In this document: positions 24,095-59,800 of the stretch, in pieces
How positions within the stretch are numbered: the stretch's first letter is position 1
How the letters are laid out: each line of letters begins with the position of its first letter
Origin: Asterias rubens
Lineage: Eukaryota
Assembly: GCF_902459465.1 (NCBI RefSeq)
Contig: NC_047069.1
Coordinates: 10,912,001 to 10,976,000, forward strand
Reading direction: 5' to 3'
Length of the DNA stretch: 64,000 nucleotides
Program-made: the position numbers and the translations under genes
The notes under the pieces: model-generated
What the model was told of the DNA's origin: nothing
Databases searched by the model: none
The model's input: only the letters and a program-made list of their open reading frames with translations

Positions 24095-25219
24095 TTAATT
24101 CGCTTTATGGTGAGGCCACTCCACTTGTAGTTTACCCATCTTATGAGCTTCAAATGGACGGCATGGTGAGTTGGCATCAAGGTACCAATGTCTCGACTTC
24201 CCTGGATAATGAGCAACTGCTGGTCCATTTATCTCTGTGGTTTCTAGGAGAGACAAGGTTGGTCGGGTTTTGCGAAGAAGTACAACAGAAACTGCACATG
24301 ATTTCATTGGGCGAAGTTCCAGGGCCGTGGAGTAGTTTTGGATGATGACAGAGTCCTCCCCGGTTGGAAGGGCTGGATTACCATGCCATTCATACAACAT
24401 ATCAAGCCCAGCATTCTTAGCATATTTGCTGAAACATCCCCATGTTTCTTTATTCTTCTCATTGTCAATGTAAATAACAACTGCTCCTGGCTTGAGCTCA
24501 CGTAGAATAGCCTGAAATAGAACACTTTTTTCTGGATCATCTCGCATGAAGGCAAACACAGCTGAGAAAGACTTGACTAAAGTTAAGATTTCAGCTTTTC
24601 TGATGGCATCCAATACAAAGGAGTCAATTGTTGAATCCCTCACAAGATCACATCGGAAGTATTCAACGGGGAATGGCTCTGGCAGTTTGTTGTGAATTTC
24701 TTTCCAGGCCGCCTTCCAGCTTGGAAATGCATCTAAGATGCTACACTTGAGCATAGCTATGGGGATCAGATTGGTGTCTATAAAGAACTTCATCAGACCC
24801 ACAAGCTCAGGTGCTGGCCCACCTCCAATGCAACAGACCCTCAGATGATTCATCTGCCTCCATCTTTGAATGATACCTGAGAGGCTTGGTTGTAGAAAAG
24901 GCTGCAGTGCCATGTACATCATGTGGCAATGCTGCATGTAGTACAGAAACACATAGGCACAGCGGTTTGCAGAGTCGTCCCATTCTGATCTGGACCATGG
25001 ATCTGTGTCTCCTAATTTACATCTGTACGCCTTGGAGATCATTTGTAGCGCAAACTTGACTCTGTGTGCTTTGTCTTGGTTAGATTGACCCTCAACATGG
25101 CTCAGGAGCTCAGGCAGAACTTCACTCACGAGGTCTCGAAAGAAATCTCCAGCATTCTGTGATTCTGGGGACAAGACACTCAAATCTATTGCCTCCTCAT
25201 TCTTGATTGAAGTTGTCAT
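24095..25219 (-). CDS. MT-1: class I SAM-dependent methyltransferase-like protein, 374 aa, single coding exon
   Basis: Intact ORF with family motifs W-x-D-x-x-x-RCAYVFLY, VCCIGGGPAPELVG (motif I), ILD, RCDLV, VKSFSA, YIDN, PMKSC. Splice acceptor (tttatag) lies 10 nt upstream of the ATG; candidate donor at 25538. Confidence 0.85.
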   Translation of the reverse strand: MTTSIKNEEAIDLSVLSPESQNAGDFFRDLVSEVLPELLSHVEGQSNQDKAHRVKFALQMISKAYRCKLGDTDPWSRSEWDDSANRCAYVFLYYMQHCHMMYMALQPFLQPSLSGIIQRWRQMNHLRVCCIGGGPAPELVGLMKFFIDTNLIPIAMLKCSILDAFPSWKAAWKEIHNKLPEPFPVEYFRCDLVRDSTIDSFVLDAIRKAEILTLVKSFSAVFAFMRDDPEKSVLFQAILRELKPGAVVIYIDNEKNKETWGCFSKYAKNAGLDMLYEWHGNPALPTGEDSVIIQNYSTALELRPMKSCAVSVVLLRKTRPTLSLLETTEINGPAVAHYPGKSRHWYLDANSPCRPFEAHKMGKLQVEWPHHKAN

Positions 25220-25979
25220 CTTCCTGCACCTATAAAATTAAGAACAGATGCAAACAATTTCAAAAACTTCATGTTAAAAGCTCCTGCCTTTCCTTAATAA
25301 AAAAAAGTAAAAGTGGTATCCGGTAGTTTATCATGGTGTGTGGGACCGCAGTGCATACATAATAATGAGGATTCACATTGCACGGCCATGATCATGGTCC
25401 CATGGAGAGGCCATCCTATATGTATAATATTAATAATACGACACCGTTAAAACTAGGCGACGGTTCATTTATAATATGAAAAATCCAGAACGGACTAAAC
25501 CTTACACATTCTCATTCAATAATCAGACTATATCTCACCTTTATTGTGTTTAGTTTTCCCTCTTATCTCAGTCTTAGTTCTTCAAACAAACTGTGGCATA
25601 AGTTCGCGCAGTCCCGAAAAGTCAAAACGTCCGTAGAGACGACCATGGGTAAACTTGACCAAGTGAGGGCGCTGCAATAAATACCGCCAGTCCCGGAGGC
25701 GTGGCATCCTGGGGTAAGGGTGCACCATTGATGACTTGGGAGTCCAGAAGGCCCATCGATACTACTCCCCCTCCTTCGATCCAGGGTGCACCCCACCAAA
25801 TAATCTCCCATTATAGCACACAGTGCAAAATGCTACATATTCAAAAATGCACGAAAAATACTTAAAAGTCTTACAGCTTTTAACTTGAAAGGGAAAATTA
25901 TTGATTGACTCTTGAACTTTTATTCTCTGCTCAATTTTATATGGGGAGTCCCTGGGCCCGTCGAGTTATTCTCCCTCCA

Positions 25980-26430
25980 AGTAAAAACACCCCTTTGAGG
26001 TCTAATTTTCAAAACGTCCGAGCATCAATCTTGAAAAATGTCCCTACACCTCTCAGCAAATAGGACCATTTATTTCAGGGCCTATGTCATCCAAAATACC
26101 TCAAGCTGGAAGTCAACAACCCCCAAGTCACAATTGGGCAACATTTTTACACTGAAACACTTTCTGGGGGCTCTCAAATCTGTCTTATATGGAATATTTT
26201 CAGGGCCTACAAAATATCAATGAGCTCGACGGTCTGTTTTCTCCTTTTTGGTGGGGTGCACCATCCGATAAAAAACACGCCACGTACGTCCGAGCGTCAA
26301 TCTTGAAAAATGTCCCTCGCCTCTCGACAGGAGGCGCATTTATTTCAGGGCCTAAGTCATCCTTCAAGTGGTAATAACCTCGCCGGGCTTTCAAACATGT
26401 CTAAATGGGGGCCTGCAAAATACTATTGAG
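25980..26430. repeat. About 270-bp degenerate direct repeat, probably transposon subterminal DNA
   Basis: acgtccgagc.tcaatcttgaaaaatgtccct at about 26015 and 26286; ttcagggccta recurs. Confidence 0.5.
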
Positions 26431-27604: not shown

Positions 27605-28536
27605 TCAGACCACTGTCCAGTAATCTGGTTTTCTCAACAGCAAAATTGACACTGTACAGCGTTGGAGTGGTTTAAATCCAGTGGACTTCGCGATGCTACT
27701 TATGGACTTCGCATGCTCAAATTCAGGCAAAACCATTTCTCCGTGCCATTCAAACAACACTTCTCTGACACCTCTTGAATACGCAATGTCCAGGAATTCT
27801 AAATGTTGATTGTTATATAGATTGTCGATGTAAAGCACCAAAGCACCAGGTCTCAACTCTTGGAAGATTTCACGAAGTAGATTTCCATGAGAGTTTCTTC
27901 TTCTTAAGAAAGCTGCGACGGTTGAAAAAAACTTGACCATAGTGATGATATGAGCTGATCGAACAGCAAAAAGACCACGTGGACTCAGCGAACTGTCTGT
28001 CCATAATATATTACCTGGCATATATGTCATTTTGTGAAGTTGAAAGTCATTCGGATTTGCAGTAGTCATTGTTCTCCAGCTATTTTCCCATTCTTGGAAC
28101 AAATCGATTATCGTGCATTCCACACGGGACGCTTGAAACAGTGGTGAACTGTCTCGGGTCCACCCCCGATACAGCAGATAGAAAGTACGGGGTTCCACCC
28201 CCAGCTTACCCGGAGAAGATACCCGGAGTACAGCAGTGACAGCTGCAAGCTTCGATATAGGCAAGATGGCAGTGAATGGTGAAAAAAACGGTATACGTAG
28301 GCGCATCGGTAACCACTGTCGCTCCAGTCGGGTCTACTGACACGCGTATCATGCAAGCTTTGTTTGTAAATAATTGAAATAGAGTCAAAACAAAGCCGAA
28401 GCCTCTCCGTCATTGCTTCTGTGTCAACACCGAGCGAAAAAATGAAGTCGAAATAGTTGCCGACGACATGGTCGAAATATTTTACCGCTTCGATTGATTG
28501 AACCGTATACACGTACAAAGGATCACAGTACTCCAT
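27605..28536 (-). pseudogene. MT-2: frameshifted methyltransferase-like paralogue
   Basis: N-terminal ORF 28108-28536 (DW..YRCAYVY, ICCIGGGP) and C-terminal frame 27605-28306 (ECTIIDLFQEW, MVKFFS, ELRPGALVLYIDN, FKPLQRCTVSILLLRK) are out of frame. About 10 codons after GGGP are missing relative to the paralogues. Confidence 0.75.
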
Positions 28537-30691: not shown

Positions 30692-31636
30692 TTACACTTT
30701 TTGTAAAAGCACCGCTCGGATTTTACAGAATCGCATCGGTTTGAAATCCACTTTACTGCTGAATTTCTTTATCGTTGCTGAGTATTTCTTCGATGGCATG
30801 ACTGTCTTACCTGACCAGTTATATAAAGTTGTCATTCCAGCAGTCAGAATAAAACTGTTGAGGAACTCCCAACTCTTGCTTGCGTTCTCATTGTCGATGA
30901 AGAGTAGCAGAGCACCTTTCTTCATTTCACGGAAGATGGTCTGCATCCTCTGTGCTCTACCGTCTTCCCTGATGAAGGCTGAGATGGTTGAAAACGTCTT
31001 GACCATAGTGACGATGTCAGCATTCTTGACCGCGTCTACGACAGGTGCTTGCAACTCTGAGTGATGAACCAAGTCACACTCTATGTACTCAACGGCTGGA
31101 AGCTCTGGTACATGTTCATGGATGCTGTCCCAAGTTTCTTTCCAACTTGGAAATAATTCAAGGACGGTGCACTTCAGTCTGGAGACGGAACACAGATCAT
31201 TTTCTCGTAGAAATGCGGCCATCCCAACCAGCTCCGAACCCGGGCCTCCTCCAAGGCTGCAAATCCGTAGATCCTTTCCATTTGTGCTCCATTGCGTGAA
31301 ATAACTTTCTCTCTGCAGTGGTTGTAAACTTAAAAACACAAGATGACTGTGTTTCATGAAGTAAAGGAACACATAGGCACAACGATTAGCAGGATCATCC
31401 CAGTCGGGTCTTGATGCTGCATCAGCTAACCCCAGCTTGGACCGGTAGGTGGCTGATATACTTCTCAGTGAGTTGGTAACCTGTTGGTGTGGTTGTTGGT
31501 TCTTCACCTTTATAAGAAGAGCTCCCAGTGTCTTTGTGAGGAGACTACGGAAGTATCCTGCTGCCTTCTTGGACTCAGGAGTCCAGAGGCAAAACAGCTT
31601 ATCTGGTATCACCATACTTTGAATTGAAGCATTCAT
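30692..31636 (-). CDS. MT-3: SAM-dependent methyltransferase-like protein, 314 aa, core domain only
   Basis: ATG at 31636 (the track starts 9 nt earlier at GTG). Acceptor ttactgcag ends at 31650; candidate donor GTAAGT at 32649. Motifs RCAYVFLYF, ICSLGGGPGSELVG, ECDLV, VKTFS, FIDN, PMRFC. Confidence 0.88.
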   Translation of the reverse strand: MNASIQSMVIPDKLFCLWTPESKKAAGYFRSLLTKTLGALLIKVKNQQPHQQVTNSLRSISATYRSKLGLADAASRPDWDDPANRCAYVFLYFMKHSHLVFLSLQPLQRESYFTQWSTNGKDLRICSLGGGPGSELVGMAAFLRENDLCSVSRLKCTVLELFPSWKETWDSIHEHVPELPAVEYIECDLVHHSELQAPVVDAVKNADIVTMVKTFSTISAFIREDGRAQRMQTIFREMKKGALLLFIDNENASKSWEFLNSFILTAGMTTLYNWSGKTVMPSKKYSATIKKFSSKVDFKPMRFCKIRAVLLQKV

Positions 31637-31866
31637 GATTTCCACCTATCTGCAGTAAGAAATACACACATGTTTGAGTATTATAATAATGAATGAATGT
31701 ATACGAATCAATGTTTCATTGATGAATGATTTTAGCATTATACAACGAAAAATCTATCCTATTCTATAGCATGCAATATCTTTCTAATCGTATGCATTTT
31801 ATAACAAACGGTTCAAACGCTTTTCAAAGACCAACTCGGTCGATCCAAGGCAACGTGTTCCTTTAA

Positions 31867-32194
31867 AGCCATTATACACTTTCGGCACAAAACAAAAAAG
31901 GTTCACATATTTACAAATAACTTACAGGGTTTACAGAAGGTAATGGTGAAAGACTTCTTTTGGAATATTATTCCATGAAATGCTTTACTTTTCGAGAAAA
32001 CATTAAAACAATTACAAATTCTCGTTGTCGAGCATTACGTATTTATTTTAAACACATGTCATGACACGGCGAAACGTGCGGAAACAAGGGTGTGTTTTCC
32101 CCGTTATTTGCTCCCGTCTCCGATGAACGATTGAGCCTAAATTTCACAGAATTGTTATTTTTTATATCACTTATACCGAAAGTGTCCGATGGCT
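31867..32194. mobile_element. TTAA-flanked MITE family B (agccattggacac / gtgtccgatggct); also 49917-50282, 53864-54229, 62598-63272
   Basis: TTAA at 31863-31866 and 32195-32198; body shared among the four copies. Confidence 0.78.
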
Positions 32195-33037
32195 TTAAGT
32201 TATCTTGTATGTGTCATAGCCGTAATGGCTGCTCCGTTTCCATGGTAAAGAAAATCCTTCTTGCTACATTTTACCAAATTTTCGAATGTTAAAATTGTAC
32301 CTCTGTGAGTAAGTTATCATCTATTGTAAAAAAATCCCACATTATAAATCTGTTTTCAAATGATTAATCTAGTTATACTGACATTTTAATTTGTTGAAAT
32401 GATGTATTGGGATAATGCACTTGATATCCAGCCGACTTAATTTATCCTGTGTCATAGCCGTCTGCTCTGTTTCCACGGGTAAGAAAACCCTAAGCTTCTT
32501 GCTACAATTTCCCAAATTTTCTAGTTTTTAAATTGTACCTCTAAAAAATCAACACCTTGTTGTCAAATGGTTAATCTAATTTTATTGACATTTTAATTTG
32601 TTTAAATAATGTATTGGGATATCTTGATAAACATAGAAGTGTTACTTACCACTGTACCGTCGGGATGTTACAGAATGATGGACAATTGAGGCCTGACAAT
32701 CGTAACAGTTTTTGCTGACGGGAAATAAGTCATTTAAAAACCAAGTATTGTTGATTGTGGCTTTGGAGGGAGATCCCCTTACATGAAATACACATAGAGC
32801 GAGTCTTTGTCACATCCTATGCAAACCATTATAAGGATAATTTATGCAGTGCTAATAATGCTTCATCATCTGCAGATGAGTGGGCTGGTGAAGTGGGTTA
32901 AACATTAACATAATGTTTCACATTATGATGTGCATCATTTCTCTCATGATGATCGGTACGCCACCAAAAACACTAGCCGGCACCACATATGGTTAGGCCT
33001 ATTGTAATGTTCTTTTTTGGTAATTGTTTTGACGAAC

Positions 33038-35963: not shown

Positions 35964-36174
35964 TTAATGCAGTTACAAGTTCTTGTTTATTGAGAAATAC
36001 ACCGAAATGTTGTCTTTTTTGTTGGGAAAAAATTATCGAACAAAAAAAGGGTGCGGCCTCAAAAAAGGATGAGGGAGGGGGGGGCGATCATTTTGTTTCT
36101 CAACTTGGCCAAATTATACTCTCTTGCAGTGTATCGGAAAGAGCGACTGGAGACCATTACACAGACTCTTCATC

Positions 36175-38190: not shown

Positions 38191-38220
38191 CCACGACTCT
38201 CCAACCTTTATTTAGACCAA

Positions 38221-43100: not shown

Positions 43101-43190
43101 CGATGCGCTTATTTCTTTCTCTACTTCACGCATCATTGCTATCTCGTGTACGTCTCCCTACAACAAGTCCGACCAGTAAGTTGGAAAAAT
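40185..43190 (+). repeat. Segmental duplicate of 33481-36480, flanked by an 87-bp direct repeat (40098-40184 and 43191-43277)
   Basis: Co-linear near-identity by eye, including MITEs and the MT-4 5' region; both junctions read directly. Confidence 0.9.
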
Positions 43191-43361
43191 AGACGAGAGT
43201 TTTCCCACCAAATGTTCATTGAGTTCGGCATTCTAATCGGCAAAGGCGACTCGAATTCTTTTACATGGCTGCCATTTATTTTGTGTATAGTTCAATCCAC
43301 CTCACTATCGGCCGAATGTTATGATCATAAGAGTTCGTCTCTCTTGTCTTGTTTTATCTAA
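42885..43361 (+). pseudogene. MT-5: 3'-truncated copy of MT-4 (first ~102 codons) reading on into non-coding sequence
   Basis: Near-identical to MT-4 from the ATG (42885) to ...SWKN (43190), then switches to sequence that lies upstream of MT-6/7/8. It lacks motif I. Confidence 0.8.
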
Positions 43362-43439: not shown

Positions 43440-43481
<42 letters not shown>

Positions 43482-43846
43482 TCCATCGATCCTGTTGTTG
43501 GCGCCTGCGCTGTTGGATATGGCTGGAAAAAAGAAGAAACAAGAGTTGCATAACGTAATGCAAAAATTTTAATATCTTATTTTCAACACAATTCTAAGCA
43601 TAAGTTTTGTACCCACCACATGTTTGTAACCTAAAACATGTGTATAGAGCTTTGTGTGTTTTTGAATCCTACAAACCAAGTATAAGCAGGTGTCAAAATG
43701 AAAAACATGTTTGTCATTTAAACATGTTTAAAAAGTGGGTATACAAGAAATGTGTTTAAACTCTAAACACTGTTTTAACACCATCATTATAATGATTTGT
43801 AATAAACATCAGATAATGTCTGTTTGTAGGTGCACCGTGAATAGTC

Positions 43847-47445: not shown

Positions 47446-48828
47446 TTAGCAATGCACCAATTTAATAAGATGTCAATGCACAGTTTTATTAGGATCTACA
47501 AACACAATAAATGATTATTCTAAATTTAGTGAGCTTTTTTTTTTAAACAGTAAAACTATAGCAACAATTTTTGAGAATGTTTAATTATAAATCTAAGATC
47601 AATATAGAACAATAAAAAATAAATGTGTGTTGATTAAGTAAGCCTTTGAAATCAATATTGTACTGTTATTTTTAGTGTGTTGTTCAATTCATATGTTGAA
47701 TTATAGTACCACAGATATAACATTCTTTCTGTTATACTTCAGATTTGTTTGCACTCAGAAAAATCAAAAAAATGTAATTAATCGACATTGAAAGTCAAAA
47801 TCCTTTGTTACCAGGATGTGCATGTTGCTCAGAAATTGTTGTACTCAATCAACTTTCCCTACATTTTTCACACACAACACTGAACGTTGCTTACACACAC
47901 ATTGTTGCAATAACGAAGGGACACAACCTTGACAGTGGTGTTACTTGCACATAAAGGGAAAAACCCAGTTGACAAGCCGTTAAATGTCGTTGAATGTCGA
48001 CTAGTCTACTATGGGTGCGTTCGTTTAGCTTCCCTGGGTCGACCCCGGTGTGTGGCGGTTTTTTTTCTTCCAGGACGAACGTGGGTAATTATCTGCACAC
48101 GTTCGTCCTGGAAAAAGAAAACGCCACACATCGGGGTTGACCCGGGGAAGCTAATCGAACGCACAGTATTACATTGTTTCCTGATATAGCGCCATCTTTA
48201 GGCTTTCTCCGTTATTAGCCTACTGCGAGTTGGCGTCTGATATTATAGCTAATAAATTGAGGAGAGTTTTGCGTGGCTGATGCTGATAAAATAACAACGA
48301 TCTCTCGGACTTGAAATCTAGTGCTCTTGTTCTCGAAAATTGTCATATTTCGCTCTCAGAAGCGTGGATCCTTTCCCAAATATGCGTCTTGCAGTTTGAC
48401 TTCGGGGGGGGGGGTGGTAATTTTAGAGGGATGGCTTGGCTCAAAAGTCGGCCGCTTAATTAATCGCCAAGAATTTAAGAGAAAAAAAAGGCATGGCCTA
48501 TTTGTCTCAAAATTTAAATAGAGATCTAGGTGTGTATATTCACCTTTGACCTCGGTCATTTCACATAGAGATACGCGGACTTGACAGGAATGAACTGTTT
48601 GGGCATCATATGGAAAACTCATGTCACTGTGTACGTTTATCCAACATCGAGGGTCGTGGGTTCGAATTCCACCCAAGTAATATGCCTGTGATATTTTTTC
48701 ACAGGACTCGGGAAAGTACTGAGTACAGTGCTAACACACATCGGTTTATGCAAGTTTAACATCTATTATATCGTTGCGGTACCCGCTGCCAAAACATAGG
48801 ATTCGAACTGCCTCTAGCCATCGGGCAT

Positions 48829-48900
48829 TCTCGGTAGTCTAGTTGGTAGGACACTGCTCTAGAATTGCAAGGGTCGTGGGTTCGAATCCAACCCGAGTTA
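48829..48900 (+). mobile_element. tRNA-derived SINE head (duplicated at about 52777-52848)
   Basis: GGTAGTCTAGTTGG...GGTTCGAATCC boxes; imperfect anticodon arm. A related fragment lies at 48646-48750, with its reverse complement near 30235-30390. Confidence 0.65.
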
Positions 48901-51116
48901 TCATGCGTGTGATAATTTGTCTGCTTAAGGAGCTCTATGAAATTAGGCCCTGGTCTTTCCCTTCTTCCTCCCGTCTTCATCCCTGTAAGACTATACAATT
49001 ACAACTATCATTTGTCTTCAGTTTATGGCCTCATCACTTTTTCATTTGTTCTTTTAATTCATTGTTTTATTATAAATTTTGTTAGAGGTCTTAGCAAAAG
49101 ATTTTCGATCTGAGATGAAACCATATGACGTTTCCATAATTATTGTTGTTGTGGGTATTATTGTTAACTAAGACATGTCAAATATTATTTATGTTGTGGT
49201 GTAATTAAATAATTCATTATGTTTTCTTCGCCAGTGGAGGGTTTGGGTGGCGCAGCAGACATACCGTTTTACGTGTTAGCAAAAAAACAAAACATTTATG
49301 CTTGCCAAGAAACTGTTACAGCCAAACTGCCATGTCATACCGAACTAGTTTTGACTGGTATCCTGCTATTATAAAATATTATTTTGGTTAGCAGAAAATG
49401 TGTAAAGAACATTTTCTTCGAGCAGCCCAGTGAACGGGTTTTCCCTTCATAGATCATCATCCATGCAACACCGCGACCTTTAGCTTATTGGTTGGATGAA
49501 TACGCAAGTACATGAGATCAAACCGTAGTCAATAGAAAAAAACTATTTCACATTTTAAGGTCACGGCCACGATGGGCGTTTCACTATACATTGCTTGTGT
49601 GTATTGCGTATATCACGATGTCATTGATGTTGATCAAAACTACGAGAACTTCAGACGCAGTGTGGGGGATGGGGGATTTGGCTCATCTGTTTGCTGAACT
49701 ATTTTAACAGGTAGGCCTTTGAAAAATTGTTTGGTTTATTCGGTTTGCATAAATTAGGCCTTTACTGTCTTCAGAATTAATTATGCAGAAACGTTGGTAA
49801 AAACACATTATTTAGATTGGTTACAAAATGTTGGAAAACATTTAGGTGAGTGTTGTAGGCCTTTTATGCACTGCGCCTGATAGTCATAATTATTATTCAC
49901 CAAGTTCTGCTATTAAAGCCATTGGACCCTTTCAGGACAGAAAAAACAAGTTCACAGATTTACAAATAATTTACAGGGTTTACAGGGTTTACAGAAGGTA
50001 ATGGTGAAAGACTTCTCTTGAAATATTAGCCCATGAAATGCTTTACTTTTTGAGAAAACGGTAACATAATATAAATTCTCGTTAGCGAGAATTACGGATT
50101 TATTTTAAACACATGTCATGACACGGCGAAACGCGCGGAAACAAGAGTGGGTTTACCCGTTATTTTCTCCCGACTCCGATGACCGATTGAGCCTAAATTT
50201 TCACAGGTTTGTTGTTTAATATATAAGTTGTGATACACGAAGTGTGGGACTTGGACAATAGTGTTTACCGAAAGTGTATGGTGAACAATCTACCCCAGTC
50301 TGCTAGACATGAAAATTAGTAATCTAATTGTGTATTGCGCATGTTTCTCAATAGCGTCACAACCATTAATTAACAAGTATGTTTTCTCTTTTTCGCTGAT
50401 TTTCGTTCCATCCTTTTTTGTTATTAGACGAGAGTTTTCCCACCAAATTTGTATTGAATTCGGCATTCTAATCGGCAAAGGCGACCTTTGTGACTCGAAT
50501 TCTTTTACGTGGCTGCCATTTTTTGGTGTTAACTCATTCCACCTCACTATCGGCCGAATATTAATGATCATAAGAGTTCGTTTCCCTTTTCTTGTTTTAT
50601 CTAAAAGGGGAGGGCGGGTCCAGAGTGTAACTTATGTTTTAACTATTTTTTTGATGTTAGAACTTTTCGCCATTTTAATCTCTGTCATGTTTTGTCTGTT
50701 TAAATTATATTATTGTGCTATTGTATCATTTAAAAGTTTTATCCATCGATCCTGTTGTTGGCGCTTGCGAAGATGTGGCTGAAAAAGGAAGAAAAATGAG
50801 TTGCATAGCGTAATGCACAAATTGTATGTTATACAAACACAGTGTTTAGTTTTCAACACAATTCTAAGCATAAGTTTTGTACCCACTATTCTCCACATGT
50901 TTGTAACCTAAAACATGTTTAGAGGGTTGTGTGTTTTTACTACAAACCAAGTAAGGCAGGTGTCAAAATGAAAAACATGTTTGTCATTTAAACATGTTTA
51001 AAAAGTGGGTATTCAAGAAATGTGTTTAAACTCTAAACACTGTTTTAACACCATCATTATAATGATTTGTAATAAACATCAGATAATGTCTGTTTGTAGG
51101 TGCACCGTGAATAGTC

Positions 51117-52424
51117 ATGGAGACCGAGAATAACCACACACCCGAGACCGAAGCAGCCGCTAACTACTTCAGACGTGTTTTGGCCAGTGCACTGAACCCT
51201 CTTTTAGATCAGGTCGAATACCAAGATCGAGAATCTAAGTTTGACGACGTGAAGGAGTCTCTGAGAAACATCACAAAGTTATACAAAACGGCACTGAATC
51301 AAACCACGTCTGGCTCCCGATCTGACTGGAACGATGCGGGTAACCGTTGCGCTTACGTGTTTGTGTATTTCATGCAGCACTGCCATCTAGTCCACTACTC
51401 GCTTCAACAAATCCAAGCTGATATCTCGAAAAATTGGCAAAATAAGAGTAGTCTGAACGTCTGCAGCATAGGTGGTGGTCCTGGATCGGATCTTGTTGGG
51501 CTGACCAGATTCCTTACGGACGCAGCTTTATTTCCACCCTCACTTACTTGTGTGGTTTTGGATCTGTACCCTAACTGGAAGCATACTTGGGGGTCAGTCT
51601 ACGACCAACTGCCTGAAACATTTGACGTAACCTACCGTAAATGTGATCTTGTTAACACGGCAGCGCTGCAAGATGACATTCTACGCTTTGTTGGAAAGGC
51701 CCACTTGCTGACTTTCGTGAAATCTTTCTCGGCAGTGGCTTCATTCTTACGGCAGGATCAAAGACGAGGTGACCGCCTTCGAGCTATTCTTCGCGCGTTG
51801 AAAGGGGGCACGTATGTACTGTACATTGACAATACACACTGGGACAAATCTTTCTTAAATAATTTCGCTTTACCCGCCGGTCTTAAAGTTGTGTTTGACC
51901 TTTGTGGCAAGCAAACTTTGCCATTTGGTCAACATTCACACACGATTAGAGAATTCAGTCACCACCTTGATTTCAGACCAATGCGAAACTGCGATGTGAC
52001 GATCTGGATTTTGTACAAAAATAAATCCGTTCGGAGCAATGTTCAGTCCACCGAGGCTTGCAGACAGGGTCGATTGCATTTACCCGTTCCCGCCCGCATG
52101 CCTTCCGCCCAATCTGTTCCAAATACAGGTAGTCTATCACAACATTTTGTACAGCCAAGAGCAGCTCCGAAATATCAGTCAACGGTAGATACTTCTTATA
52201 AGTACGCCTATCCGACACCAACTGTTCCAACACCAGCCACACCAACTGTTCGTCATCATCAAGATCACACACCTCGGATAAATGAAGAGTACCAACCAAC
52301 AAGGCCTTGCAGGGCTCAGACAAGTGAAGATGCCAGAAAACAGACAAATTACCGAATTAGCGCTTGGAAGACATTTAAGCGTTGCTTTTGTTGTACTCGC
52401 ACAGACGAGTTTGAGAATGAATAG
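51117..52424 (+). CDS. MT-7: methyltransferase-like protein, 435 aa
   Basis: Intact ORF; core almost identical to MT-6; C-terminus WKTFKRCFCCTRTDEFENE; same acceptor context. Confidence 0.88.
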   Translation: METENNHTPETEAAANYFRRVLASALNPLLDQVEYQDRESKFDDVKESLRNITKLYKTALNQTTSGSRSDWNDAGNRCAYVFVYFMQHCHLVHYSLQQIQADISKNWQNKSSLNVCSIGGGPGSDLVGLTRFLTDAALFPPSLTCVVLDLYPNWKHTWGSVYDQLPETFDVTYRKCDLVNTAALQDDILRFVGKAHLLTFVKSFSAVASFLRQDQRRGDRLRAILRALKGGTYVLYIDNTHWDKSFLNNFALPAGLKVVFDLCGKQTLPFGQHSHTIREFSHHLDFRPMRNCDVTIWILYKNKSVRSNVQSTEACRQGRLHLPVPARMPSAQSVPNTGSLSQHFVQPRAAPKYQSTVDTSYKYAYPTPTVPTPATPTVRHHQDHTPRINEEYQPTRPCRAQTSEDARKQTNYRISAWKTFKRCFCCTRTDEFENE

Positions 52425-55062
52425 ACCATTAGCCTAGCATGTGGTGTTAAACAATAATATGGCTGCCGCGAGACTACTCTATACGGTCTTGCGCATCAGC
52501 ACAGCCTCATCGCAAGATACAGCGGACTTGACAGGAATGAACTGTTTGGGCATCATATGGAAAACTCATGTCACTGTGTACGTTTATCCAACATCGAGGG
52601 TCGTGGGTTCGAATTCCACCCAAGTAATATGCCTGTGATATTTTTTCACAGGACTCGGGAAAGTACTGAGTACAGTGCTAACACACATCGGTTTATGCAA
52701 GTTTAACATCTATTATATCGTTGCGGTACCCGCTGCCAAAACATAGGATTCGAAACTGCCTCTAGCCATCGGGCATTCTCGGTAGTCTAGTTGGTAGGAC
52801 ACTGCTCTAGAATTGCAAGGGTCGTGGGTTCGAATCCAACCCGAGTTATCATGCGTGTGATAATTTGTCTGCTTAAGGAGCTCTATGAAATTAGGCCCTG
52901 GTCTTTCCCTTCTTCCTCCCGTCTTCATCCCTGTAAGACTATACAATTACAACTATCATTTGTCTTCAGTTTATGGCCTCATCACTTTTTCATTTGTTCT
53001 TTTAATTCATTGTTTTATTATAAATTTTGTTAGAGGTCTTAGCAGATTTTTTCGATCTGAGATGAAACCATATGACGTTTCCATAATTATTGTTGTTGTG
53101 GGTATTATTGTTAACTAAGACATGTCAAATATTATTTATGTTGTGGTGTAATTAAATAATTCATTATGTTTTCTTCGCCAGTGGAGGGTTTGGGTGGCGC
53201 AGCAGACATACCGTTTTACGTGTTAGCAAAAAAACAAAACATTTATGCTTGCCAAGAAACTGTTACAGCCAAACTGCCATGTCATACCGAACTAGTTTTG
53301 ACTGGTATCCTGCTATTATAAAATATTATTTTGGTTAGCAGAAAATGTGTAAAGAACATTTTCTTCGAGCAGCCCAGTGAACGGGTTTTCCCTTCATAGA
53401 TCATCATCCATGCAACACCGCGACCTTTAGCTTATTGGTTGGATGAATACGCAAGTACATGAGATCAAACCGTAGTCAATAGAAAAAAACTATTTCACAT
53501 TTTAAGGTCACGGCCACGATGGGCGTTTCACTATACATTGCTTGTGTGTATTGCGTATATCACGATGTCATTGATGTTGATCAAAACTACGAGAACTTCA
53601 GACGCAGTGTGGGGGATGGGGGATTTGGCTCATCTGTTTGCTGAACTATTTTAACAGGTAGGCCTTTGAAAAATTGTTTGGTTTATTCGGTTTGCATAAA
53701 TTAGGCCTTTACTGTCTTCAGAATTAATTATGCAGAAACGTTGGTAAAAACACATTATTTAGATTGGTTACAAAATGTTGGAAAACATTTAGGTGAGTGT
53801 TGTAGGCCTTTTATGCACTGCGCCTGATAGTCATACTTATTATTCACCAAGTTCTGCTATTAAAGCCATTGGACCCTTTCAGGACAGAAAAAACAAGTTC
53901 ACAGATTTACAAATAATTTACAGGGTTTACAGGGTTTACAGAAGGTAATGGTGAAAGACTTCTCTTGAAATATTAGCCCATGAAATGCTTTACTTTTTGA
54001 GAAAACGGTAACATAATATAAATTCTCGTTAGCGAGAATTACGGATTTATTTTAAACACATGTCATGACACGGCGAAACGCGCGGAAACAAGAGTGGGTT
54101 TACCCGTTATTTTCTCCCGACTCCGATGACCGATTGAGCCTAAATTTTCACAGGTTTGTTGTTTAATATATAAGTTGTGATACACGAAGTGTGGGACTTG
54201 GACAATAGTGTTTACCGAAAGTGTATGGTGAACAATCTACCCCAGTCTGCTAGACATGAAAATTAGTAATCTAATTGTGTATTGCGCATGTTTCTCAATA
54301 GCGTCACAACCATTAATTAACAAGTATGTTTTCTCTTTTTCGCTGATTTTCGTTCCATCCTTTTTGTTATTAGACGAGAGTTTTCCCACCAAATTTGTAT
54401 TGAATTCGGCATTCTAATCGGCAAAGGCGACCTTTGTGACTCGAATTCTTTTACGTGGCTGCCATTTTTTGGTGTTAACTCATTCCACCTCACTATCGGC
54501 CGAATATTAATGATCATAAGAGTTCGTTTCCCTTTTCTTGTTTTATCTAAAAGGGGAGGGCGGGTCCAGAGTGTAACTTATGTTTTAACTATTTTTTTGA
54601 TGTTAGAACTTTTCGCCATTTTAATCTCTGTCATGTTTTGTCTGTTTAAATTATATTATTGTGCTATTGTATCATTTAAAAGTTTTATCCATCGATCCTG
54701 TTGTTGGCGCTTGCGAAGATGTGGCTGAAAAAGGAAGAAAAATGAGTTGCATAGCGTAATGCACAAATTGTATGTTATACAAACACAGTGTTTAGTTTTC
54801 AACACAATTCTAAGCATAAGTTTTGTACCCACTATTCTCCACATGTTTGTAACCTAAAACATGTTTAGAGGGTTGTGTGTTTTTACTACAAACCAAGTAA
54901 GGCAGGTGTCAAAATGAAAAACATGTTTGTCATTTAAACATGTTTAAAAAGTGGGTATTCAAGAAATGTGTTTAAACTCTAAACACTGTTTTAACACCAT
55001 CATTATAATGATTTGTAATAAACATCAGATAATGTCTGTTTGTAGGTGCACCGTGAATAGTC

Positions 55063-56370
55063 ATGGAGACCGAGAATAACCACACACCCGAGACCGAAGC
55101 AGCCGCTAACTACTTCAGACGTGTTTTGGCCAGTGCACTGAACCCTCTTTTAGATCAGGTCGAATACCAAGATCGAGAATCTAAGTTTGACGACGTGAAG
55201 GAGTCTCTGAGAAACATCACAAAGTTATACAAAACGGCACTGAATCAAACCACGTCTGGCTCCCGATCTGACTGGAACGATGCGGGTAACCGTTGCGCTT
55301 ACGTGTTTGTGTATTTCATGCAGCACTGCCATCTAGTCCACTACTCGCTTCAACAAATCCAAGCTGATATCTCGAAAAATTGGCAAAATAAGAGTAGTCT
55401 GAACGTCTGCAGCATAGGTGGTGGTCCTGGATCGGATCTTGTTGGGCTGACCAGATTCCTTACGGACGCAGCTTTATTTCCACCCTCACTTACTTGTGTG
55501 GTTTTGGATCTGTACCCTAACTGGAAGCATACTTGGGGGTCAGTCTACGACCAACTGCCTGAAACATTTGACGTAACCTACCGTAAATGTGATCTTGTTA
55601 ACACGGCAGCGCTGCAAGATGACATTCTACGCTTTGTTGGAAAGGCCCACTTGCTGACTTTCGTGAAATCTTTCTCGGCAGTGGCTTCATTCTTACGGCA
55701 GGATCAAAGACGAGGTGACCGCCTTCGAGCTATTCTTCGCGCGTTGAAAGGGGGCACGTATGTACTGTACATTGACAATACACACTGGGACAAATCTTTC
55801 TTAAATAATTTCGCTTTACCCGCCGGTCTTAAAGTTGTGTTTGACCTTTGTGGCAAGCAAACTTTGCCATTTGGTCAACATTCACACACGATTAGAGAAT
55901 TCAGTCACCACCTTGATTTCAGACCAATGCGAAACTGCGATGTGACGATCTGGATTTTGTACAAAAATAAATCCGTTCGGAGCAATGTTCAGTCCACCGA
56001 GGCTTGCAGACAGGGTCGATTGCATTTACCCGTTCCCGCCCGCATGCCTTCCGCCCAATCTGTTCCAAATACAGGTAGTCTATCACAACATTTTGTACAG
56101 CCAAGAGCAGCTCCGAAATATCAGTCAACGGTAGATACTTCTTATAAGTACGCCTATCCGACACCAACTGTTCCAACACCAGCCACACCAACTGTTCGTC
56201 ATCATCAAGATCACACACCTCGGATAAATGAAGAGTACCAACCAACAAGGCCTTGCATGGCTCAGACAAGTGAAGATGCCAGAAAACAGACAAATTACCG
56301 AATTAGCGCTTGGAAGACATTTAAGCGTTGCTTTTGTTGTACTCGCACAGACGAGTTTGAGAATGAATAG
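55063..56370 (+). CDS. MT-8: methyltransferase-like protein, 435 aa, near-identical duplicate of MT-7
   Basis: Same protein as MT-7 except PCRAQ to PCMAQ in the tail. Confidence 0.85.
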   Translation: METENNHTPETEAAANYFRRVLASALNPLLDQVEYQDRESKFDDVKESLRNITKLYKTALNQTTSGSRSDWNDAGNRCAYVFVYFMQHCHLVHYSLQQIQADISKNWQNKSSLNVCSIGGGPGSDLVGLTRFLTDAALFPPSLTCVVLDLYPNWKHTWGSVYDQLPETFDVTYRKCDLVNTAALQDDILRFVGKAHLLTFVKSFSAVASFLRQDQRRGDRLRAILRALKGGTYVLYIDNTHWDKSFLNNFALPAGLKVVFDLCGKQTLPFGQHSHTIREFSHHLDFRPMRNCDVTIWILYKNKSVRSNVQSTEACRQGRLHLPVPARMPSAQSVPNTGSLSQHFVQPRAAPKYQSTVDTSYKYAYPTPTVPTPATPTVRHHQDHTPRINEEYQPTRPCMAQTSEDARKQTNYRISAWKTFKRCFCCTRTDEFENE

Positions 56371-56396
56371 ACCATTAGCCTAGCATGTGGTGTTAA

Positions 56397-56877
56397 ACAC
56401 CTACATGAGCGGAATGTTTTTCAACGGAAATGGTATTTTAACTTATTTATAATGCACTTTTTCACCATTTTAATGTAACTTCGATTTGTTTACATTTCTG
56501 GGTTTTTTCGTATTTATCGATTAAAAAATCAGGCCCCAACCTAAAAGTTTTAAAAAACTAAAACACTTCTGCCGTTGACGGCGAGGACAATGTAGTCATC
56601 TCTGGGAGTTTGCTTTGTTATACCTCCACGCTCCAACAAAGCGGCCTACAAATTGGAGCTCCCAACTATGACGTTTTTAGAGTGATTACGTAACGAGGCT
56701 TTTCGCAAATCTCTCAGAAAGGCACTGGATAAGGGCATTCAAAATGATTGTTTTTTTTGTTTACACAATTGAAATTATCTATTTATAGTCATATGACTCG
56801 ATTTCCTTATTAATTAAAAACATTTTAGGTGAAATTCAGCAAAGTTCACGGCTTGACATTTTCGTTCAAGCAGGTCT
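56397..56877. mobile_element. 481-bp TTAA-flanked insertion with degenerate TIR
   Basis: TTAA at 56393-56396 and 56878-56881; empty site gtggtgTTAAatag is present downstream of MT-6 and MT-9. Confidence 0.75.
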
Positions 56878-56881
56878 TTAA

Positions 56882-59800
56882 ATAGCTTGCTTATTGTGCA
56901 AATTGTCATCTTCTCGCGATCCACGTCCACTACAGCAAAAGATAAATGTGCGAATCAAAGGCATATCAACAAAAAACTTCTTCTGATTCGACATTTATAA
57001 CAAAATAGAATGGATCTGCCTGCCCTACAATAAGGGCTGAAGATAAACATTTTTATTATATTTTAAATTAAGTAAGAATCATAAATTGTTAGTTGTTTTC
57101 GATTTGCATGTCGGCTGGTCTCGTTTCAGCTGATATGAAAGATATTCAAATACCTTGTTTTCATCGTAAAGGCCTACAGGCCAAACAAAACGTTGCATAC
57201 ACAATAATACGATTGAAACGAAGGAGTAGAAAACAAACAACCTTTACAAGAAATGTTTTTTGTTGCACTTGCACATCAGAGAAAAACCCAGCCCCAGTAA
57301 TTCTCTCTGTGGGTGAAATAACGAATAACTAATTAGCTAGACTTGTGGACAATCCGTTAAACTGTCGTGTATCTAGAGACTTGTGGACAAGTCGTTATAA
57401 GGGCTGAAGCATTTTTGTTCAATTTTAAATTTAGTAAGAAACTTGTGTAAATATAGGCAAAATTGTTTATTATTTGTACGTCCGGTCTCTTAATAACTTT
57501 GTTTAAGCTGATGTGGTAAGGGAAGTTGTTTCCATGAACTCGTTACCTTGAAGATGATCCAATACTTCTTTGTTGCAATTCAGTATTGCACATCAGGAAC
57601 AAAAAAACAGCCACAATAATTCTGTCATGGGGGGGGGGACATAGTTAGCTGGCCTTGTGGACAAGCCAGTAAGTGCCTGCCGGCGGAGCGAGCGAAACGG
57701 CTCTCTTGTAACTATCTGTCAATAATATGGCTGCCGCGAGACTACTCTATACGGTCTTGCGCATCAGCACAGCCTCATCGCAAGATACAGAGGGCCGTTT
57801 ATATTATGGTAAAGCCTGCTAATGTTTTTTTTTATTGGCCATACTTGCATTTTTTAGCAACTGTTTCGAGATTGCGAATGTGTTTCTATAAGTGTTAGAA
57901 GATAGCCATTCATATTTTACCTATATCTAAAGATGTAACCCCTTATATAGAAACACAATGATGATTCTGAACAATAGTTCTAACGCAACACTCGTGCAAT
58001 TCGAAATGTTATTTGTAAATATTGACTCATAGATGTAATAAGCAGACTTTATTTTAAATCACACATAAATTTATAGTCGAAATCTATACGTGTAGCAACA
58101 CGTTTTAAAGAAAGTGTTTTTTATTATCAATTTAACCTTTGTTTTTTTAACCCAATGTACACTATTGGTAACTACTAAAAATAACTGTTAGCATAAAAAG
58201 CTGTTGAGAACATTGTCTTCAAAATAATGACAAGTACAATTTTTTTGCTTAACAATGCACCAATTTAATTAGACGTTCAATGCGCAGTTTTATTAGGATC
58301 TACAAACACAATAAATGATTATTACAAAATTAGTGAGCATTTTGAAAAACACATTAAAACTATAGCAACAATTTTGAGAACGTTTAATTATAAATTTAAG
58401 ATCAATATAGAACAATAAAAAATAAATGTGTGTTAACTAAGTAAGCCTTTGAAATAAATATTGTATTGTTATTTTTAGTGTGTTGTTCAATTCATATGTT
58501 GAATTATAGTACCACAGATATAACATTCTTTCTGTTATACTTCAGATTTGTTTGCACTCAGAAAAATCAACAAAATGTAATTAATCGACATTGAAAGTCA
58601 AAATCCTTTGTTACCAGGATGTGCATGTTGCTCAGAAATTGTTGCACTCAATCAACTTTCCCTACATTTTTCACACACAACACAACACAGATTTCAGACC
58701 AAAGAGGGCACGTATGTACTGTACATTGACAATACACACTGGGACAAATCTTTCTTAAATAATTTCGCTTTACCCGCCGGTCTTAAAGTTGTGTTTGACC
58801 TTTGTGGCAAGCAAACTTTGCCATTTGGTCAACATTCACACACGATTAGAGAATTCAGTCACCACCTTGATTTCAGACCAATGCGAAACTGCGATGTGAC
58901 GATCTGGATTTTGTACAAAAATAAATCCGTTCGGAGCAATGTTCAGTCCACCGAGGCTTGCAGACGAGGTCGATGGCATTTTATCTGCGCACAACCACCA
59001 AGTCAAGAGTTTAGACCCGTTCCCGCCCGCATGCCTCCCGCCCAATCTGTTCCAAATACAGGTAGTCTATCACAACATTTTGTACCGCAAAGAGCAGCTC
59101 CGAAATATCAGTCAACGGTAGATACTTCTTATAAGTACGCCTATCCGACACCAACTCACAGACCTCAGATAAATGAAGTGTACTCATCAATGTCACAGAC
59201 CTCAGATAAATGAAGTGTACTCATCATCAATATCACAGACCTCAGATAAATTAAGTGTACCGGCCAACAAGGCCTTGCAGGGCTCAGACAAGTGAAGATG
59301 CCAGGAATCAGACAAATTACCAAATTAGCGCTTGGAAGACATTTAAGCGTTGCTTTTGTTGTACTCGCACAGAGGACGGAGAGTTTGAGAATGAATAGAC
59401 CATTAGCCTAGCATGTGGTGTTAAATAGATTGCTTATTGTGCAAATTGTCATCTTCTCATGATCCACGTCCACTTTACATTGGATGCAAAAGGCATATCA
59501 ACTAAAAACTTCTTCTGATTCGACATTTTTAAGAAAATAGAATGGATCTGACTGTCCGTACAATTAGGGATGAATATAAACATTTTTATTCAATTTTAAA
59601 TTCAAGGCAGTGGACACTATTGGTAATTACTCAAAATAATTATTAGCATAAAACCTCACTTGGTAACGAGTAACGGGGAGCTGTTGATAGTATAAAATAT
59701 TGTGAGAAACGGCTCTCTCTGAAGTGACGTTGTTTTCGAGAAAGAAGTAATTTTCCATGAATTTGATTTCGAGACCTCAAGTTTAGAACTTGACCTCTCG

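What the first reader, a model, noticed from the sequence alone, without database searches (positions are those of the whole stretch)
24095..59398. Tandem array of nine copies of an uncharacterised SAM-dependent methyltransferase family
Seen: six intact ORFs (MT-1, 3, 4, 6, 7, 8) and three broken copies in 35 kb. Three point left and six point right. All intact copies share W-x-D-x3-RCAY-x3-Y-x3-H, (C/S)(I/L)GGGP(G/A)x(D/E)LVG, an acidic residue after the next strand (LD/LE), CDLV, VK(S/T)(F/Y)S, (F/Y)IDN and PM-x-x-C. Established: a Gly-rich motif I followed by an acidic residue at the end of beta2 marks the class I Rossmann SAM-binding fold. From memory, an AY helix preceding an IGGG motif most resembles the Bmt6 (Methyltransf_34) and Rsm22/METTL17 groups. 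Inference: this is a lineage-specific birth-and-death family with no vertebrate orthologue that I recognise. Both deeply diverged and brand-new copies are present, a pattern typical of chemical-defence, detoxification or immune enzymes rather than housekeeping rRNA methylases.
Basis: partly seen in the sequence, partly recalled or inferred. Interest (0 to 1): 0.88.

Follow-up and report, generated by a model that had tools for sequence, protein, structure and literature searches.

The report
Starfish tandem array of Bmt6-like methyltransferases
A 35-kb stretch of a starfish chromosome carries nine tandem copies (six intact, three broken) of an unstudied SAM-dependent methyltransferase that is related to rRNA methylases and to a bacterial operon gene, is often membrane-anchored in animals, and probably acts on RNA, although its function is untested.

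Summary
There are nine copies, six intact and three broken, with three on the minus strand and six on the plus strand, and every quoted motif is present in every intact copy.
- One copy passes the Pfam Methyltransf_34 threshold.
- A confident AlphaFold model matches yeast Bmt6 best among Swiss-Prot models (TM 0.67, others about 0.4).
- The same model matches METTL17/Rsm22 best among solved structures (Z 17.5-20, others 13.7 or less).

The family is not starfish-specific. It occurs in four echinoderm classes, spiders, a scorpion and a centipede. It is homologous end to end (hhalign E 1e-49) to bacterial ~280-aa proteins that usually sit directly upstream of a DUF1848 gene.

New points:
- 27 of 60 animal members end in a CaaX box, a cysteine cluster or a tail-anchor helix.
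- A crinoid member is a single-ORF fusion to three RRM domains.
- MT3 has a spliced 5' leader and is transcribed.
- The MT6-8 cores were homogenised by gene conversion.
- MT2 and MT5 were disabled or created after the split from Asterias amurensis.

Best reading: a birth-and-death family of membrane-tethered, probably RNA-directed methyltransferases. The substrate and any defence role are untested. Earlier scan notes on this same window cover the tails and the 3-kb duplication.

The parts
24095..25219 (-). MT1, intact single-exon CDS (374 aa); no anchor-like C-terminus
   Evidence: ORF list, tblastn, motifs; 79% identical to orthologue P0012 in a third starfish
27605..28536 (-). MT2, recent pseudogene: a 34-bp deletion at about 28157 removes the end of SAM motif I and shifts the frame; there are also +1 and +2 bp insertions at 28288 and 28259
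   Evidence: Two overlapping ORF pieces. Alignment with the intact 320-aa orthologue in A. amurensis L006:202-1164 shows 98.2% DNA identity. P0018 in a third species also reads through
30692..31636 (-). MT3 CDS (314 aa, no tail); the only copy above the Pfam PF11312 gathering score; the copy that was modelled
   Evidence: (P0001, 100% identity); orthologue dN/dS 0.22
31650..32726 (-). MT3 5' intron (31650-32649, GTAAGT...CAG on the minus strand) and untranslated leader exon (at least 32650-32726)
   Evidence: RNA contig X2 record 15 joins 31649 to 32650; splice sites read
36175..37374 (+). MT4 CDS (399 aa): core, then a ~100-aa basic tail ending in a hydrophobic tail-anchor helix
   Evidence: Tail hydropathy is 2.6 and the helix is conserved in orthologue P0010, whereas the PPPY motif at residue 338 is not. 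Core dN/dS is 0.75
42885..43205 (+). MT5, a 5' fragment (about 100 codons) of an MT4 copy, carried by the 3-kb duplication
   Evidence: tblastn, self-blastn; the duplication has no counterpart in A. amurensis
33476..36481 (+). Parent segment of the 3-kb duplication; its copy lies at 40180-43191 (97.8% identity)
   Evidence: Both copies map to the same single L006 interval, so the duplication post-dates the species split
43847..45202 (+). MT6 CDS (451 aa): core, then a ~150-aa Pro/Thr/Ser-rich tail ending in a cluster of six cysteines
   Evidence: sparse RNA reads over the core
43716..44815 (+). Gene-conversion tract shared with MT7 and MT8 (99% identity or more), flanked by 72-94% identity
   Evidence: Sliding identity. 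Core dN 0 and dS 0.01 against tail dS 0.107. Core dS to the positional orthologue is 0.077, so conversion post-dates speciation
51117..52424 (+). MT7 CDS (435 aa), tail ending KRCFCC...
55063..56370 (+). MT8 CDS (435 aa), one residue different from MT7
48569..56399 (+). Two tandem 3.9-kb units (48569-52453 and 52515-56399), 99.77% identical, carrying MT7 and MT8
   Evidence: Self-blastn
58695..59362 (+). MT9, a 5'-truncated 3' fragment (last ~77 core codons plus tail) with a frameshift
   Evidence: tblastn hits in two frames; 84-86% DNA identity to MT6 and MT7

Best explanation
The array is a birth-and-death cluster of genes for class I SAM-dependent methyltransferases. They belong to a distinct animal branch of the Methyltransf_34 (Bmt6-like) and Rsm22-like fold group.

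Each gene has one coding exon; MT3 is shown to have a spliced 5' leader as well. The roughly 300-residue core has an N-terminal helical cap with three conserved tyrosines. It keeps an intact GGGPG motif I, the acidic residue after strand 2, an invariant Trp, and a D-N pair at the end of strand 5. It should therefore bind SAM and transfer methyl groups (inferred from motifs and fold, not assayed).

Many members, including MT4 and MT6-8, add a disordered tail that ends in a tail-anchor helix, a cysteine cluster or a CC-aaX prenylation box. This should tether the enzyme to the cytosolic face of membranes (inferred).

The most likely substrate class is RNA, through base methylation (inferred). The grounds are the nearest characterised folds, a genuine methyltransferase plus three-RRM fusion in a crinoid, and bacterial relatives linked to nucleic-acid-acting genes.

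The array evolves by segmental and tandem duplication, gene conversion of the catalytic core, near-neutral drift of the tails, and recent pseudogenisation (shown).
For: Fold and family:
- Pfam PF11312 gives 27.7 bits for MT3 (threshold 26) and 16-20 bits for the other copies.
- The AF2 model has pLDDT 82 and pTM 0.86.
- The Swiss-Prot best match is yeast Bmt6 at TM 0.67; the next matches are about 0.43.
- In PDB by VIA-align, METTL17 (8csp_7) scores Z 20.1, 6sg9_F1 19.6 and Rsm22 (8d8j_0) 17.5, while generic methyltransferases score 13.7 or less.
- Family-wide conserved residues include all SAM motifs.

Substrate clues:
- Crinoid P0046 has the core followed by three RRM_1 domains (E 2e-57), encoded by one uninterrupted 1,962-bp ORF.
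- An 'RRM domain-containing protein' appears among the AFDB fold-cluster hits.
- Bacterial homologues (hhalign probability 100%, E 1e-49) are coupled to DUF1848 in 4 of 6 contexts. One sits beside Mrr, helicase and Fic genes, and one beside AlkB-like and Ada/AlkA genes.
- The DUF1848 neighbour matches the PADLOC model RTasDUF1848.

Anchors: 27 of 60 animal members against 2 of 30 bacterial members have anchor-like C-termini, including 15 CaaX boxes.

Expression: a spliced MT3 transcript with a GT..AG intron and sparse reads on MT6-8.

Evolution.
Against: - No biochemical data exist for any member.
- Sequence similarity to Bmt6 is only about 13%, and five of six copies fall below the Pfam threshold.
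- METTL17/Rsm22, the best solved matches, act mainly as assembly factors, so resemblance to them does not prove catalysis.
- Foldseek's lowest E-values in PDB go to natural-product and small-molecule methyltransferases, although their TM scores are below 0.45.
- The RRM fusion is seen in one crinoid lineage only.
- Bacterial gene neighbourhood is indirect evidence for animal function.
- MT4 core dN/dS of 0.75 and three pseudogenes suggest weak constraint on part of the array.
- Expression is low in the runs examined, and the tissues are unknown.
Confidence: 0.6

Rival explanations
1. The enzymes methylate small molecules or lipids as part of chemical defence or detoxification. On this view the membrane anchors place them next to lipophilic substrates.
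For: Tandem expansion with turnover and relaxed constraint. Lipid or transmembrane anchors. Foldseek's best E-values in PDB are O-methyltransferases, NNMT and prenyl-diphosphate methyltransferases. Starfish and sea cucumbers are rich in secondary metabolites (general knowledge).
Against: Those PDB matches have TM below 0.45 and only generic Z scores (13.7 or less), whereas the rRNA-associated METTL17/Rsm22/Bmt6 group stands clearly apart. There is a single-ORF fusion to three RRM domains. Bacterial relatives sit with nucleic-acid-acting genes, not biosynthetic clusters.
Confidence: 0.15
2. The proteins are SAM-binding but essentially non-catalytic RNA or ribosome chaperones or scaffolds, in the manner proposed for METTL17/Rsm22.
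For: The top solved structural matches are mitoribosome assembly factors. The SAM motifs are kept, as they are in METTL17.
Against: There is no Rsm22 Pfam match and no cysteine set conserved across the family for an Fe-S cluster. A tandemly expanding, lipid-anchored family is an odd fit for a ribosome-assembly role. The D-N pair and the Trp near the expected active site are invariant from bacteria to animals, which suggests that chemistry is retained.
Confidence: 0.1
3. The animal family is a domesticated bacterial defence or repair gene acquired by horizontal transfer. It now serves innate immunity, for example by methylating viral RNA at membrane-bound replication sites.
For: The closest non-animal relatives are bacterial. 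The coding exons lack introns. The animal distribution is patchy. One bacterial locus lies in a defence-island-like setting, and DUF1848 is a DRT accessory gene. An A. amurensis copy lies inside a C-type lectin cluster.
Against: Animals form one clade in which echinoderms and arachnids are each monophyletic. That fits old vertical descent with losses equally well. No eukaryotic outgroup was available to root the tree. The methyltransferase matches no PADLOC model. No DUF1848 gene is present in the window. There are no infection-response data.
Confidence: 0.12

Closest known systems
Yeast Bmt6 (YLR063W), the 25S rRNA m3U2843 methyltransferase; Pfam Methyltransf_34 (PF11312)
   Same: Both have a class I Rossmann fold with the same N-terminal helical cap, and the whole-protein structural match (TM 0.67) is the best in Swiss-Prot. 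The Pfam HMM aligns over the motif I to strand 3 region. The glycine-rich SAM motif, shown to be essential in Bmt6 (PMC3950682), is invariant here.
   Different: Identity is only about 13%, and five of six copies fall below the Pfam gathering score. Bmt6 is a single-copy cytoplasmic protein reported only in 'lower eukaryotes' (PMC3950682). These genes are tandemly multiplied, occur in animals, and often carry membrane anchors or long disordered tails. The target is unknown.
METTL17 / Rsm22 mitoribosomal small-subunit assembly methyltransferases (PDB 8csp chain 7, 8d8j chain 0, 6sg9 chain F1)
   Same: They are the best solved structural matches, with Z 17.5-20.1 over about 250-260 residues, well above generic methyltransferases.
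   Different: There is no PF09243 match and identity is 10-14%. No cysteine set is conserved across the family, unlike the Fe-S cluster site of METTL17 (PMC11046306). The proteins here are much shorter, and nothing suggests a mitochondrial role.
Bacterial ~280-320 aa Methyltransf_34-like proteins encoded directly upstream of DUF1848 (uncharacterised)
   Same: Homology runs end to end, including the cap helices and last strands (hhalign probability 100%, E 1e-49, 274 columns, 22% identity). The same conserved residues are present. They are the nearest large clusters in the ESM Atlas.
   Different: The bacterial proteins lack tails and anchors (2 of 30) and are translationally coupled to DUF1848. 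The window contains no DUF1848 gene.

Membership tests
Class I (Rossmann-fold) SAM-dependent methyltransferases | Alternating beta/alpha core with seven strands | tested here: met
   The AF2 model (pLDDT 82, pTM 0.86) has strands at 126-131, 157-163, 185-189, 211-215, 246-252, 271-282 and 306-316. At least 500 methyltransferase matches were found.
Class I (Rossmann-fold) SAM-dependent methyltransferases | Gly-rich motif I after strand 1 and an acidic residue at the end of strand 2 | tested here: met
   GGGPG at 132-136 and D/E163 are conserved at 83-100% in echinoderm, arachnid and bacterial members and are present in all six intact copies.
Class I (Rossmann-fold) SAM-dependent methyltransferases | SAM binding and methyl transfer | not testable with these tools
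   Requires a protein assay.
Pfam Methyltransf_34 (PF11312, Bmt6 family) | Score at or above the gathering threshold (26 bits) | tested here: inconclusive
   MT3 scores 27.7 bits and passes. MT1 (16.7), MT4 (16.5), MT6 (20.1) and MT7 (20.2) fail. Precomputed PF11312 hits exist for several orthologues and spider members.
Pfam Methyltransf_34 (PF11312, Bmt6 family) | Whole-protein fold matches Bmt6 better than other methyltransferases | tested here: met
   Q12291 gives TM 0.67 over residues 9-317; the next hits are 0.45 or less.
Pfam Methyltransf_34 (PF11312, Bmt6 family) | N3-uridine methylation of large-subunit rRNA (orthologous function) | not testable with these tools
   No assay was possible. 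Identity of 13% and multi-copy status argue against simple orthology.
Rsm22 / METTL17 (PF09243) | Pfam Rsm22 match | tested here: not met
   No PF09243 hit at E up to 1 in five copies.
Rsm22 / METTL17 (PF09243) | Conserved cysteines for an Fe-S cluster | tested here: not met
   No cysteine column is conserved across the three branches. The METTL17 cluster site is described in PMC11046306. The site positions were not mapped residue by residue.
Rsm22 / METTL17 (PF09243) | Structural similarity | tested here: met
   Z 20.1, 19.6 and 17.5 for the three top solved matches.
Bacterial methyltransferase-DUF1848 two-gene module | Methyltransferase homologous over its full length | tested here: met
   hhalign E 1e-49 over 274 columns.
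Bacterial methyltransferase-DUF1848 two-gene module | Adjacent DUF1848 gene | tested here: not met
   The only tblastn hit in the window is out of frame and contains a stop. Whether the genome encodes DUF1848 elsewhere was not testable.
CaaX-prenylated / tail-anchored proteins | C-terminal Cys-aliphatic-aliphatic-X box or a single C-terminal hydrophobic helix | tested here: met
   Met for part of the family. There are 15 CaaX boxes (CTIL, CILL, CVIS, CSII and others) among 60 animal members. Tail helices occur in MT4, P0010 and P0014. MT6-8 have cysteine clusters but no CaaX box. MT1 and MT3 have neither. Actual lipidation was not tested.

The most novel reading that the evidence does not exclude
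Animals such as echinoderms, arachnids and myriapods keep an expanding family of lipid-anchored nucleic-acid methyltransferases that shares ancestry with a bacterial methyltransferase-DUF1848 module, possibly through ancient horizontal transfer. On this reading the family acts in innate immunity by methylating foreign or membrane-associated RNA.
Probability: 0.12. Interest if true: 0.85.

Novelty: new variant of a known kind. Interest (0 to 1): 0.55.

Why it matters
Bmt6-type methyltransferases were described as single-copy rRNA enzymes of fungi and 'lower eukaryotes'. This work finds a sizeable, unstudied animal branch, annotated only as 'uncharacterized protein', with three unusual traits:
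- It expands and decays in tandem arrays.
- It is repeatedly fitted with membrane anchors (CaaX boxes, cysteine clusters, tail-anchor helices).
- Its closest relatives are bacterial operon genes.

If the substrate is RNA, this would be a rare case of membrane-tethered RNA methylation in animals. It would also offer a way to study both the bacterial methyltransferase-DUF1848 pair and a possible invertebrate defence function. If the substrate proves to be a metabolite, the family would still be a new enzyme class for echinoderm and spider chemistry.

Tried and rejected
- **Genome-contig scan for bacterial relatives.** Contexts were obtained through the look-up of encoding contigs instead.
- **DUF1848 in the window.** The tblastn hit at 44730-44867 (E 7e-4) is in a different frame from MT6 and contains a stop, so it was rejected as spurious.
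- **PADLOC.** No defence-system model matches the methyltransferase, even at E up to 10.
- **Animal homologues of DUF1848.** All 120 listed hits are bacterial or metagenomic, but the list is too shallow to exclude animal copies, so the result is inconclusive.
- **Run X1.** It was set aside as transcription evidence because its contigs also cover intergenic DNA at similar depth.
- **RNA-seq strand.** First-mate ratios were not coherent between the minus-strand MT3 and the plus-strand MT6, so no strand claim is made.
- **Profile search of PDB sequences.** Only non-significant METTL6 matches were found (E about 0.1).
- **Core isoelectric points.** Starfish cores have pI 6.2-9.3 and bacterial proteins a median of 5.4, which does not discriminate between substrates.
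- **Rfam.** The interspersed repeat gave no match.
- **Deep-paralogue dN/dS.** It was unusable because dS is saturated.


Full report
**1. What is in the window**

The window is AT-rich (33-44% GC) and has no N runs. A tblastn of the six long ORFs against the window finds nine related loci between 24095 and 59362 and none elsewhere.

| Copy | Coordinates | Strand | State |
|---|---|---|---|
| MT1 | 24095-25219 | - | intact |
| MT2 | 27605-28536 | - | frameshifted |
| MT3 | 30692-31636 | - | intact |
| MT4 | 36175-37374 | + | intact |
| MT5 | ~42885-43205 | + | 5' fragment |
| MT6 | 43847-45202 | + | intact |
| MT7 | 51117-52424 | + | intact |
| MT8 | 55063-56370 | + | intact |
| MT9 | 58695-59362 | + | 5'-truncated, frameshifted |

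**2. Fold and family**

- Pfam gives only Methyltransf_34 (PF11312, the Bmt6 family). MT3 scores 27.7 bits against a threshold of 26, and the other copies score 16-20 bits.
- An AlphaFold2 model of MT3, built on an 11-sequence alignment, is confident (pLDDT 82, pTM 0.86). It shows a helical N-terminal cap followed by a seven-stranded alternating core.
- Against Swiss-Prot models the best match is yeast Bmt6 (Q12291), with TM 0.67 over residues 9-317. All other methyltransferases score 0.45 or less.
- Foldseek against PDB returns only generic class I methyltransferases with TM below 0.45.
- A Foldseek-independent VIA-align search separates three entries from the rest: human METTL17 (8csp_7, Z 20.1), a Trypanosoma mitoribosome assembly factor (6sg9_F1, Z 19.6) and yeast Rsm22 (8d8j_0, Z 17.5). 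Generic enzymes score 13.7 or less.
- AlphaFold DB fold clusters add unnamed proteins at TM 0.62-0.72, along with Rsm22, Bmt6 and one 'RRM domain-containing protein'.

Membership is still only borderline for PF11312 and is not met for Rsm22, which shows no PF09243 hit and no conserved cysteine set.

**3. Distribution**

An exhaustive profile search finds 1,166 cluster representatives at E up to 0.001 and 589 at E up to 1e-10. The named members come from these groups:
- starfish (Acanthaster, Patiria, Asterias rubens, A. amurensis)
- a brittle star (Amphiura)
- crinoids (Antedon, Anneissia)
- a sea cucumber (Holothuria)
- many spiders
- a scorpion (Centruroides)
- a centipede (Strigamia)

No vertebrate or insect appears among about 60 named hits.

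The abundant ~280-aa hits are bacterial. In four of six independent contexts the gene is immediately followed by, or overlaps, a DUF1848 gene. One of those loci lies among Mrr, DEAD/ResIII helicase, Fic and transposase genes. A fifth context has an AlkB-like dioxygenase next door and an Ada/AlkA gene nearby. The sixth has neither.

The DUF1848 neighbour matches the PADLOC model RTasDUF1848 (E 3e-42). The UG/Abi paper reports that UG25 reverse transcriptases carry an N-terminal methylase and associate with a DUF1848 cluster (PMC9226505). The methyltransferase itself matches no PADLOC model.

Animal and bacterial profiles align end to end (hhalign probability 100%, E 1e-49, 274 columns). The ESM Atlas's nearest large clusters are bacterial PF11312 proteins whose structural neighbours are Rsm22-like.

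In a maximum-likelihood tree the animals form one clade (SH-aLRT 99). Arachnids (93) and echinoderms (85) each fall on one side, and the bacteria lie outside. No fungal or protist sequence was available to root the tree, so vertical descent with losses and ancient transfer cannot be told apart.

**4. Conserved residues**

Across echinoderm, arachnid and bacterial members the conserved positions, in MT3 numbering, are:
- Y67, Y91 and Y95 in the cap helices
- G132-G-G-P-G136 and G141 (motif I)
- D/E163 at the end of strand 2
- W168, D210, S219 and G244
- D251-N252 at the end of strand 5
- K316

The SAM-binding apparatus is intact in every intact window copy. Catalysis is inferred, not shown.

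**5. Substrate clues**

The crinoid protein P0046 has the methyltransferase core followed by three RRM_1 domains (E 2e-57). The whole 653-residue protein is encoded by one uninterrupted 1,962-bp ORF in the Antedon genome, so the fusion is not a gene-model artefact. This fusion, the rRNA-associated nearest folds and the bacterial neighbourhoods all favour RNA, or at least nucleic acid, as the substrate. That is inference. The profile search against PDB sequences gave only non-significant METTL6 hits.

**6. Membrane anchors**

Twenty-seven of 60 animal members, against 2 of 30 bacterial ones, end in an anchor-like feature:
- Fifteen have a CaaX box, mostly preceded by another cysteine. Examples are Patiria CTIL, Anneissia CILL, and spider CVIS, CSII, CTII and CVIA.
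- Others have clusters of three to six cysteines, as in MT6-8.
- Others have a hydrophobic tail helix, as in MT4 and its orthologue P0010, and in P0014.

MT1 and MT3 have none of these. The MT4 tail helix is conserved in the sister species, but its PPPY motif is not (PPPR there). Anchoring is a recurrent trait of the animal branch. Actual lipidation and localisation are untested.

**7. Expression and gene structure**

An RNA contig (run X2) covers the whole MT3 coding exon and joins 31649 to 32650. The skipped kilobase begins GTAAGT and ends CAG on the minus strand. MT3 is therefore a spliced, transcribed gene with an untranslated leader exon and a single coding exon.

Raw-read runs give roughly 3-15-fold depth on MT3, 0.5-4-fold on the MT6-8 core and a few reads on the MT4/5 5' part. 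The MT2 pseudogene is weakly covered. Run X1 also covers intergenic DNA and was not counted. The tissues are unknown.

**8. Evolution of the array**

Deep paralogues are 38-47% identical with saturated dS. Each has a closer orthologue in another starfish than any paralogue in the window: MT1 with P0012 (79%), MT3 with P0002 (86%), MT4 with P0010 (93%) and MT6-8 with P0008.

The array is syntenic in two other species:
- Asterias amurensis (GCA_032118995.1, locus L006) carries MT2, MT3(-), MT4(+), MT6(+) and the start of an MT7 unit, in the same order.
- A third species' contig carries MT3, MT2 and MT1 orthologues in a row.

The window is 96-99% identical to L006. This fits Asterias rubens or a very close relative (inference).

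Orthologue dN/dS values:

| Copy | Core | Tail |
|---|---|---|
| MT3 | 0.22 | no tail |
| MT6 | 0.32 | 0.81 |
| MT7 | 0.39 | 1.28 |
| MT4 | 0.75 | 0.85 |

Recent events:
- **MT7 and MT8.** They lie in two 3.9-kb tandem units that are 99.77% identical.
- **MT6 and MT7/8 cores.** They are identical at the protein level (dS 0.01), although their flanks are 72-94% identical and their tails have dS 0.107. The tract spans 43716-44815. The MT6 core's dS to its positional orthologue is 0.077, so gene conversion happened after speciation.
- **MT5.** It rides on a 3-kb duplication (33476-36481 copied to 40180-43191, 97.8% identity) that is absent at that position in A. amurensis.
- **MT2.** It is 98.2% identical to an intact 320-aa orthologue but carries a 34-bp deletion inside motif I at about 28157.
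- **MT9.** It is a truncated and frameshifted remnant.

This is a clear birth-and-death pattern.

**9. Verdict**

The finding is real, and the fold assignment is correct. The genes form a distinct, unstudied animal branch of the Bmt6/Rsm22-like methyltransferases. I found no paper on the family in animals: a search for Methyltransf_34, PF11312 and DUF3115 returned one unrelated bioinformatics paper.

The most likely mechanism is SAM-dependent base methylation of RNA by enzymes that are often membrane-tethered. The alternatives are small-molecule methylation, a non-catalytic scaffold role, and an immune function of bacterial origin. None of these is excluded. Earlier scan notes on this same window (s1-172807, s1-172808, s1-172809) had flagged the MT4 and MT6-8 tails and the 3-kb duplication, and my tests agree with them and extend them.

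Noticed in passing
window 3358-3738, 8756-9138, 13185-13569, 22647-23067, 33039-33403, 34477-34861, 35635-35967, 41190-41576, 42347-42679, 47066-47463: A ~370-bp interspersed repeat with at least ten copies at 71-86% identity, six of them inside the array. It attracts very high RNA-seq depth (hundreds to thousands of reads) with many chimeric joints. A scan of three copies found no Rfam match. It may supply the homology for the rearrangements.
   Followed up: partly
L007:10001-11335 (A. amurensis CP134969.1): An MT7/8-like gene (P0008, 444 aa) lies on a different chromosome record from the syntenic array. With about 6 kb of flank it is collinear with window 54977-57069 and 59421-61988. It sits between tandem C-type lectin genes. 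Neither the window nor L006 contains a lectin.
   Followed up: partly
L004:519-2010 and 5762-7010: One bacterial homologue lies directly downstream of an AlkB-like 2OG-Fe(II) dioxygenase and near an Ada/AlkA fusion gene. This pairs a methyltransferase with alkylation-repair enzymes.
   Followed up: no
window 37186-37197 (MT4 residue 338): The PPPY motif in the MT4 tail reads PPPR in the A. amurensis orthologue, so it is not conserved. The tail-anchor helix is conserved.
   Followed up: yes
window 13551-13910 (+): An ORF with clear TPR repeats (TPR_1, E 2e-8), probably an exon of an unrelated gene left of the array.
   Followed up: partly
window 6506-7024 (+): A 172-aa ORF with no Pfam match. 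From memory it looks like the C-terminal part of a non-LTR retrotransposon ORF2.
   Followed up: partly
P0026 (Strigamia maritima, 909 aa): The centipede protein contains up to three methyltransferase-like stretches. One matches PF11312 far more strongly (72 bits) than any starfish copy. It may be a tandem-domain protein or a merged gene model.
   Followed up: no
window 51973-52347 and 55919-56293 (-): Identical 124-aa antisense ORFs lie inside the MT7 and MT8 tails. They are probably just a by-product of the tail's composition.
   Followed up: no
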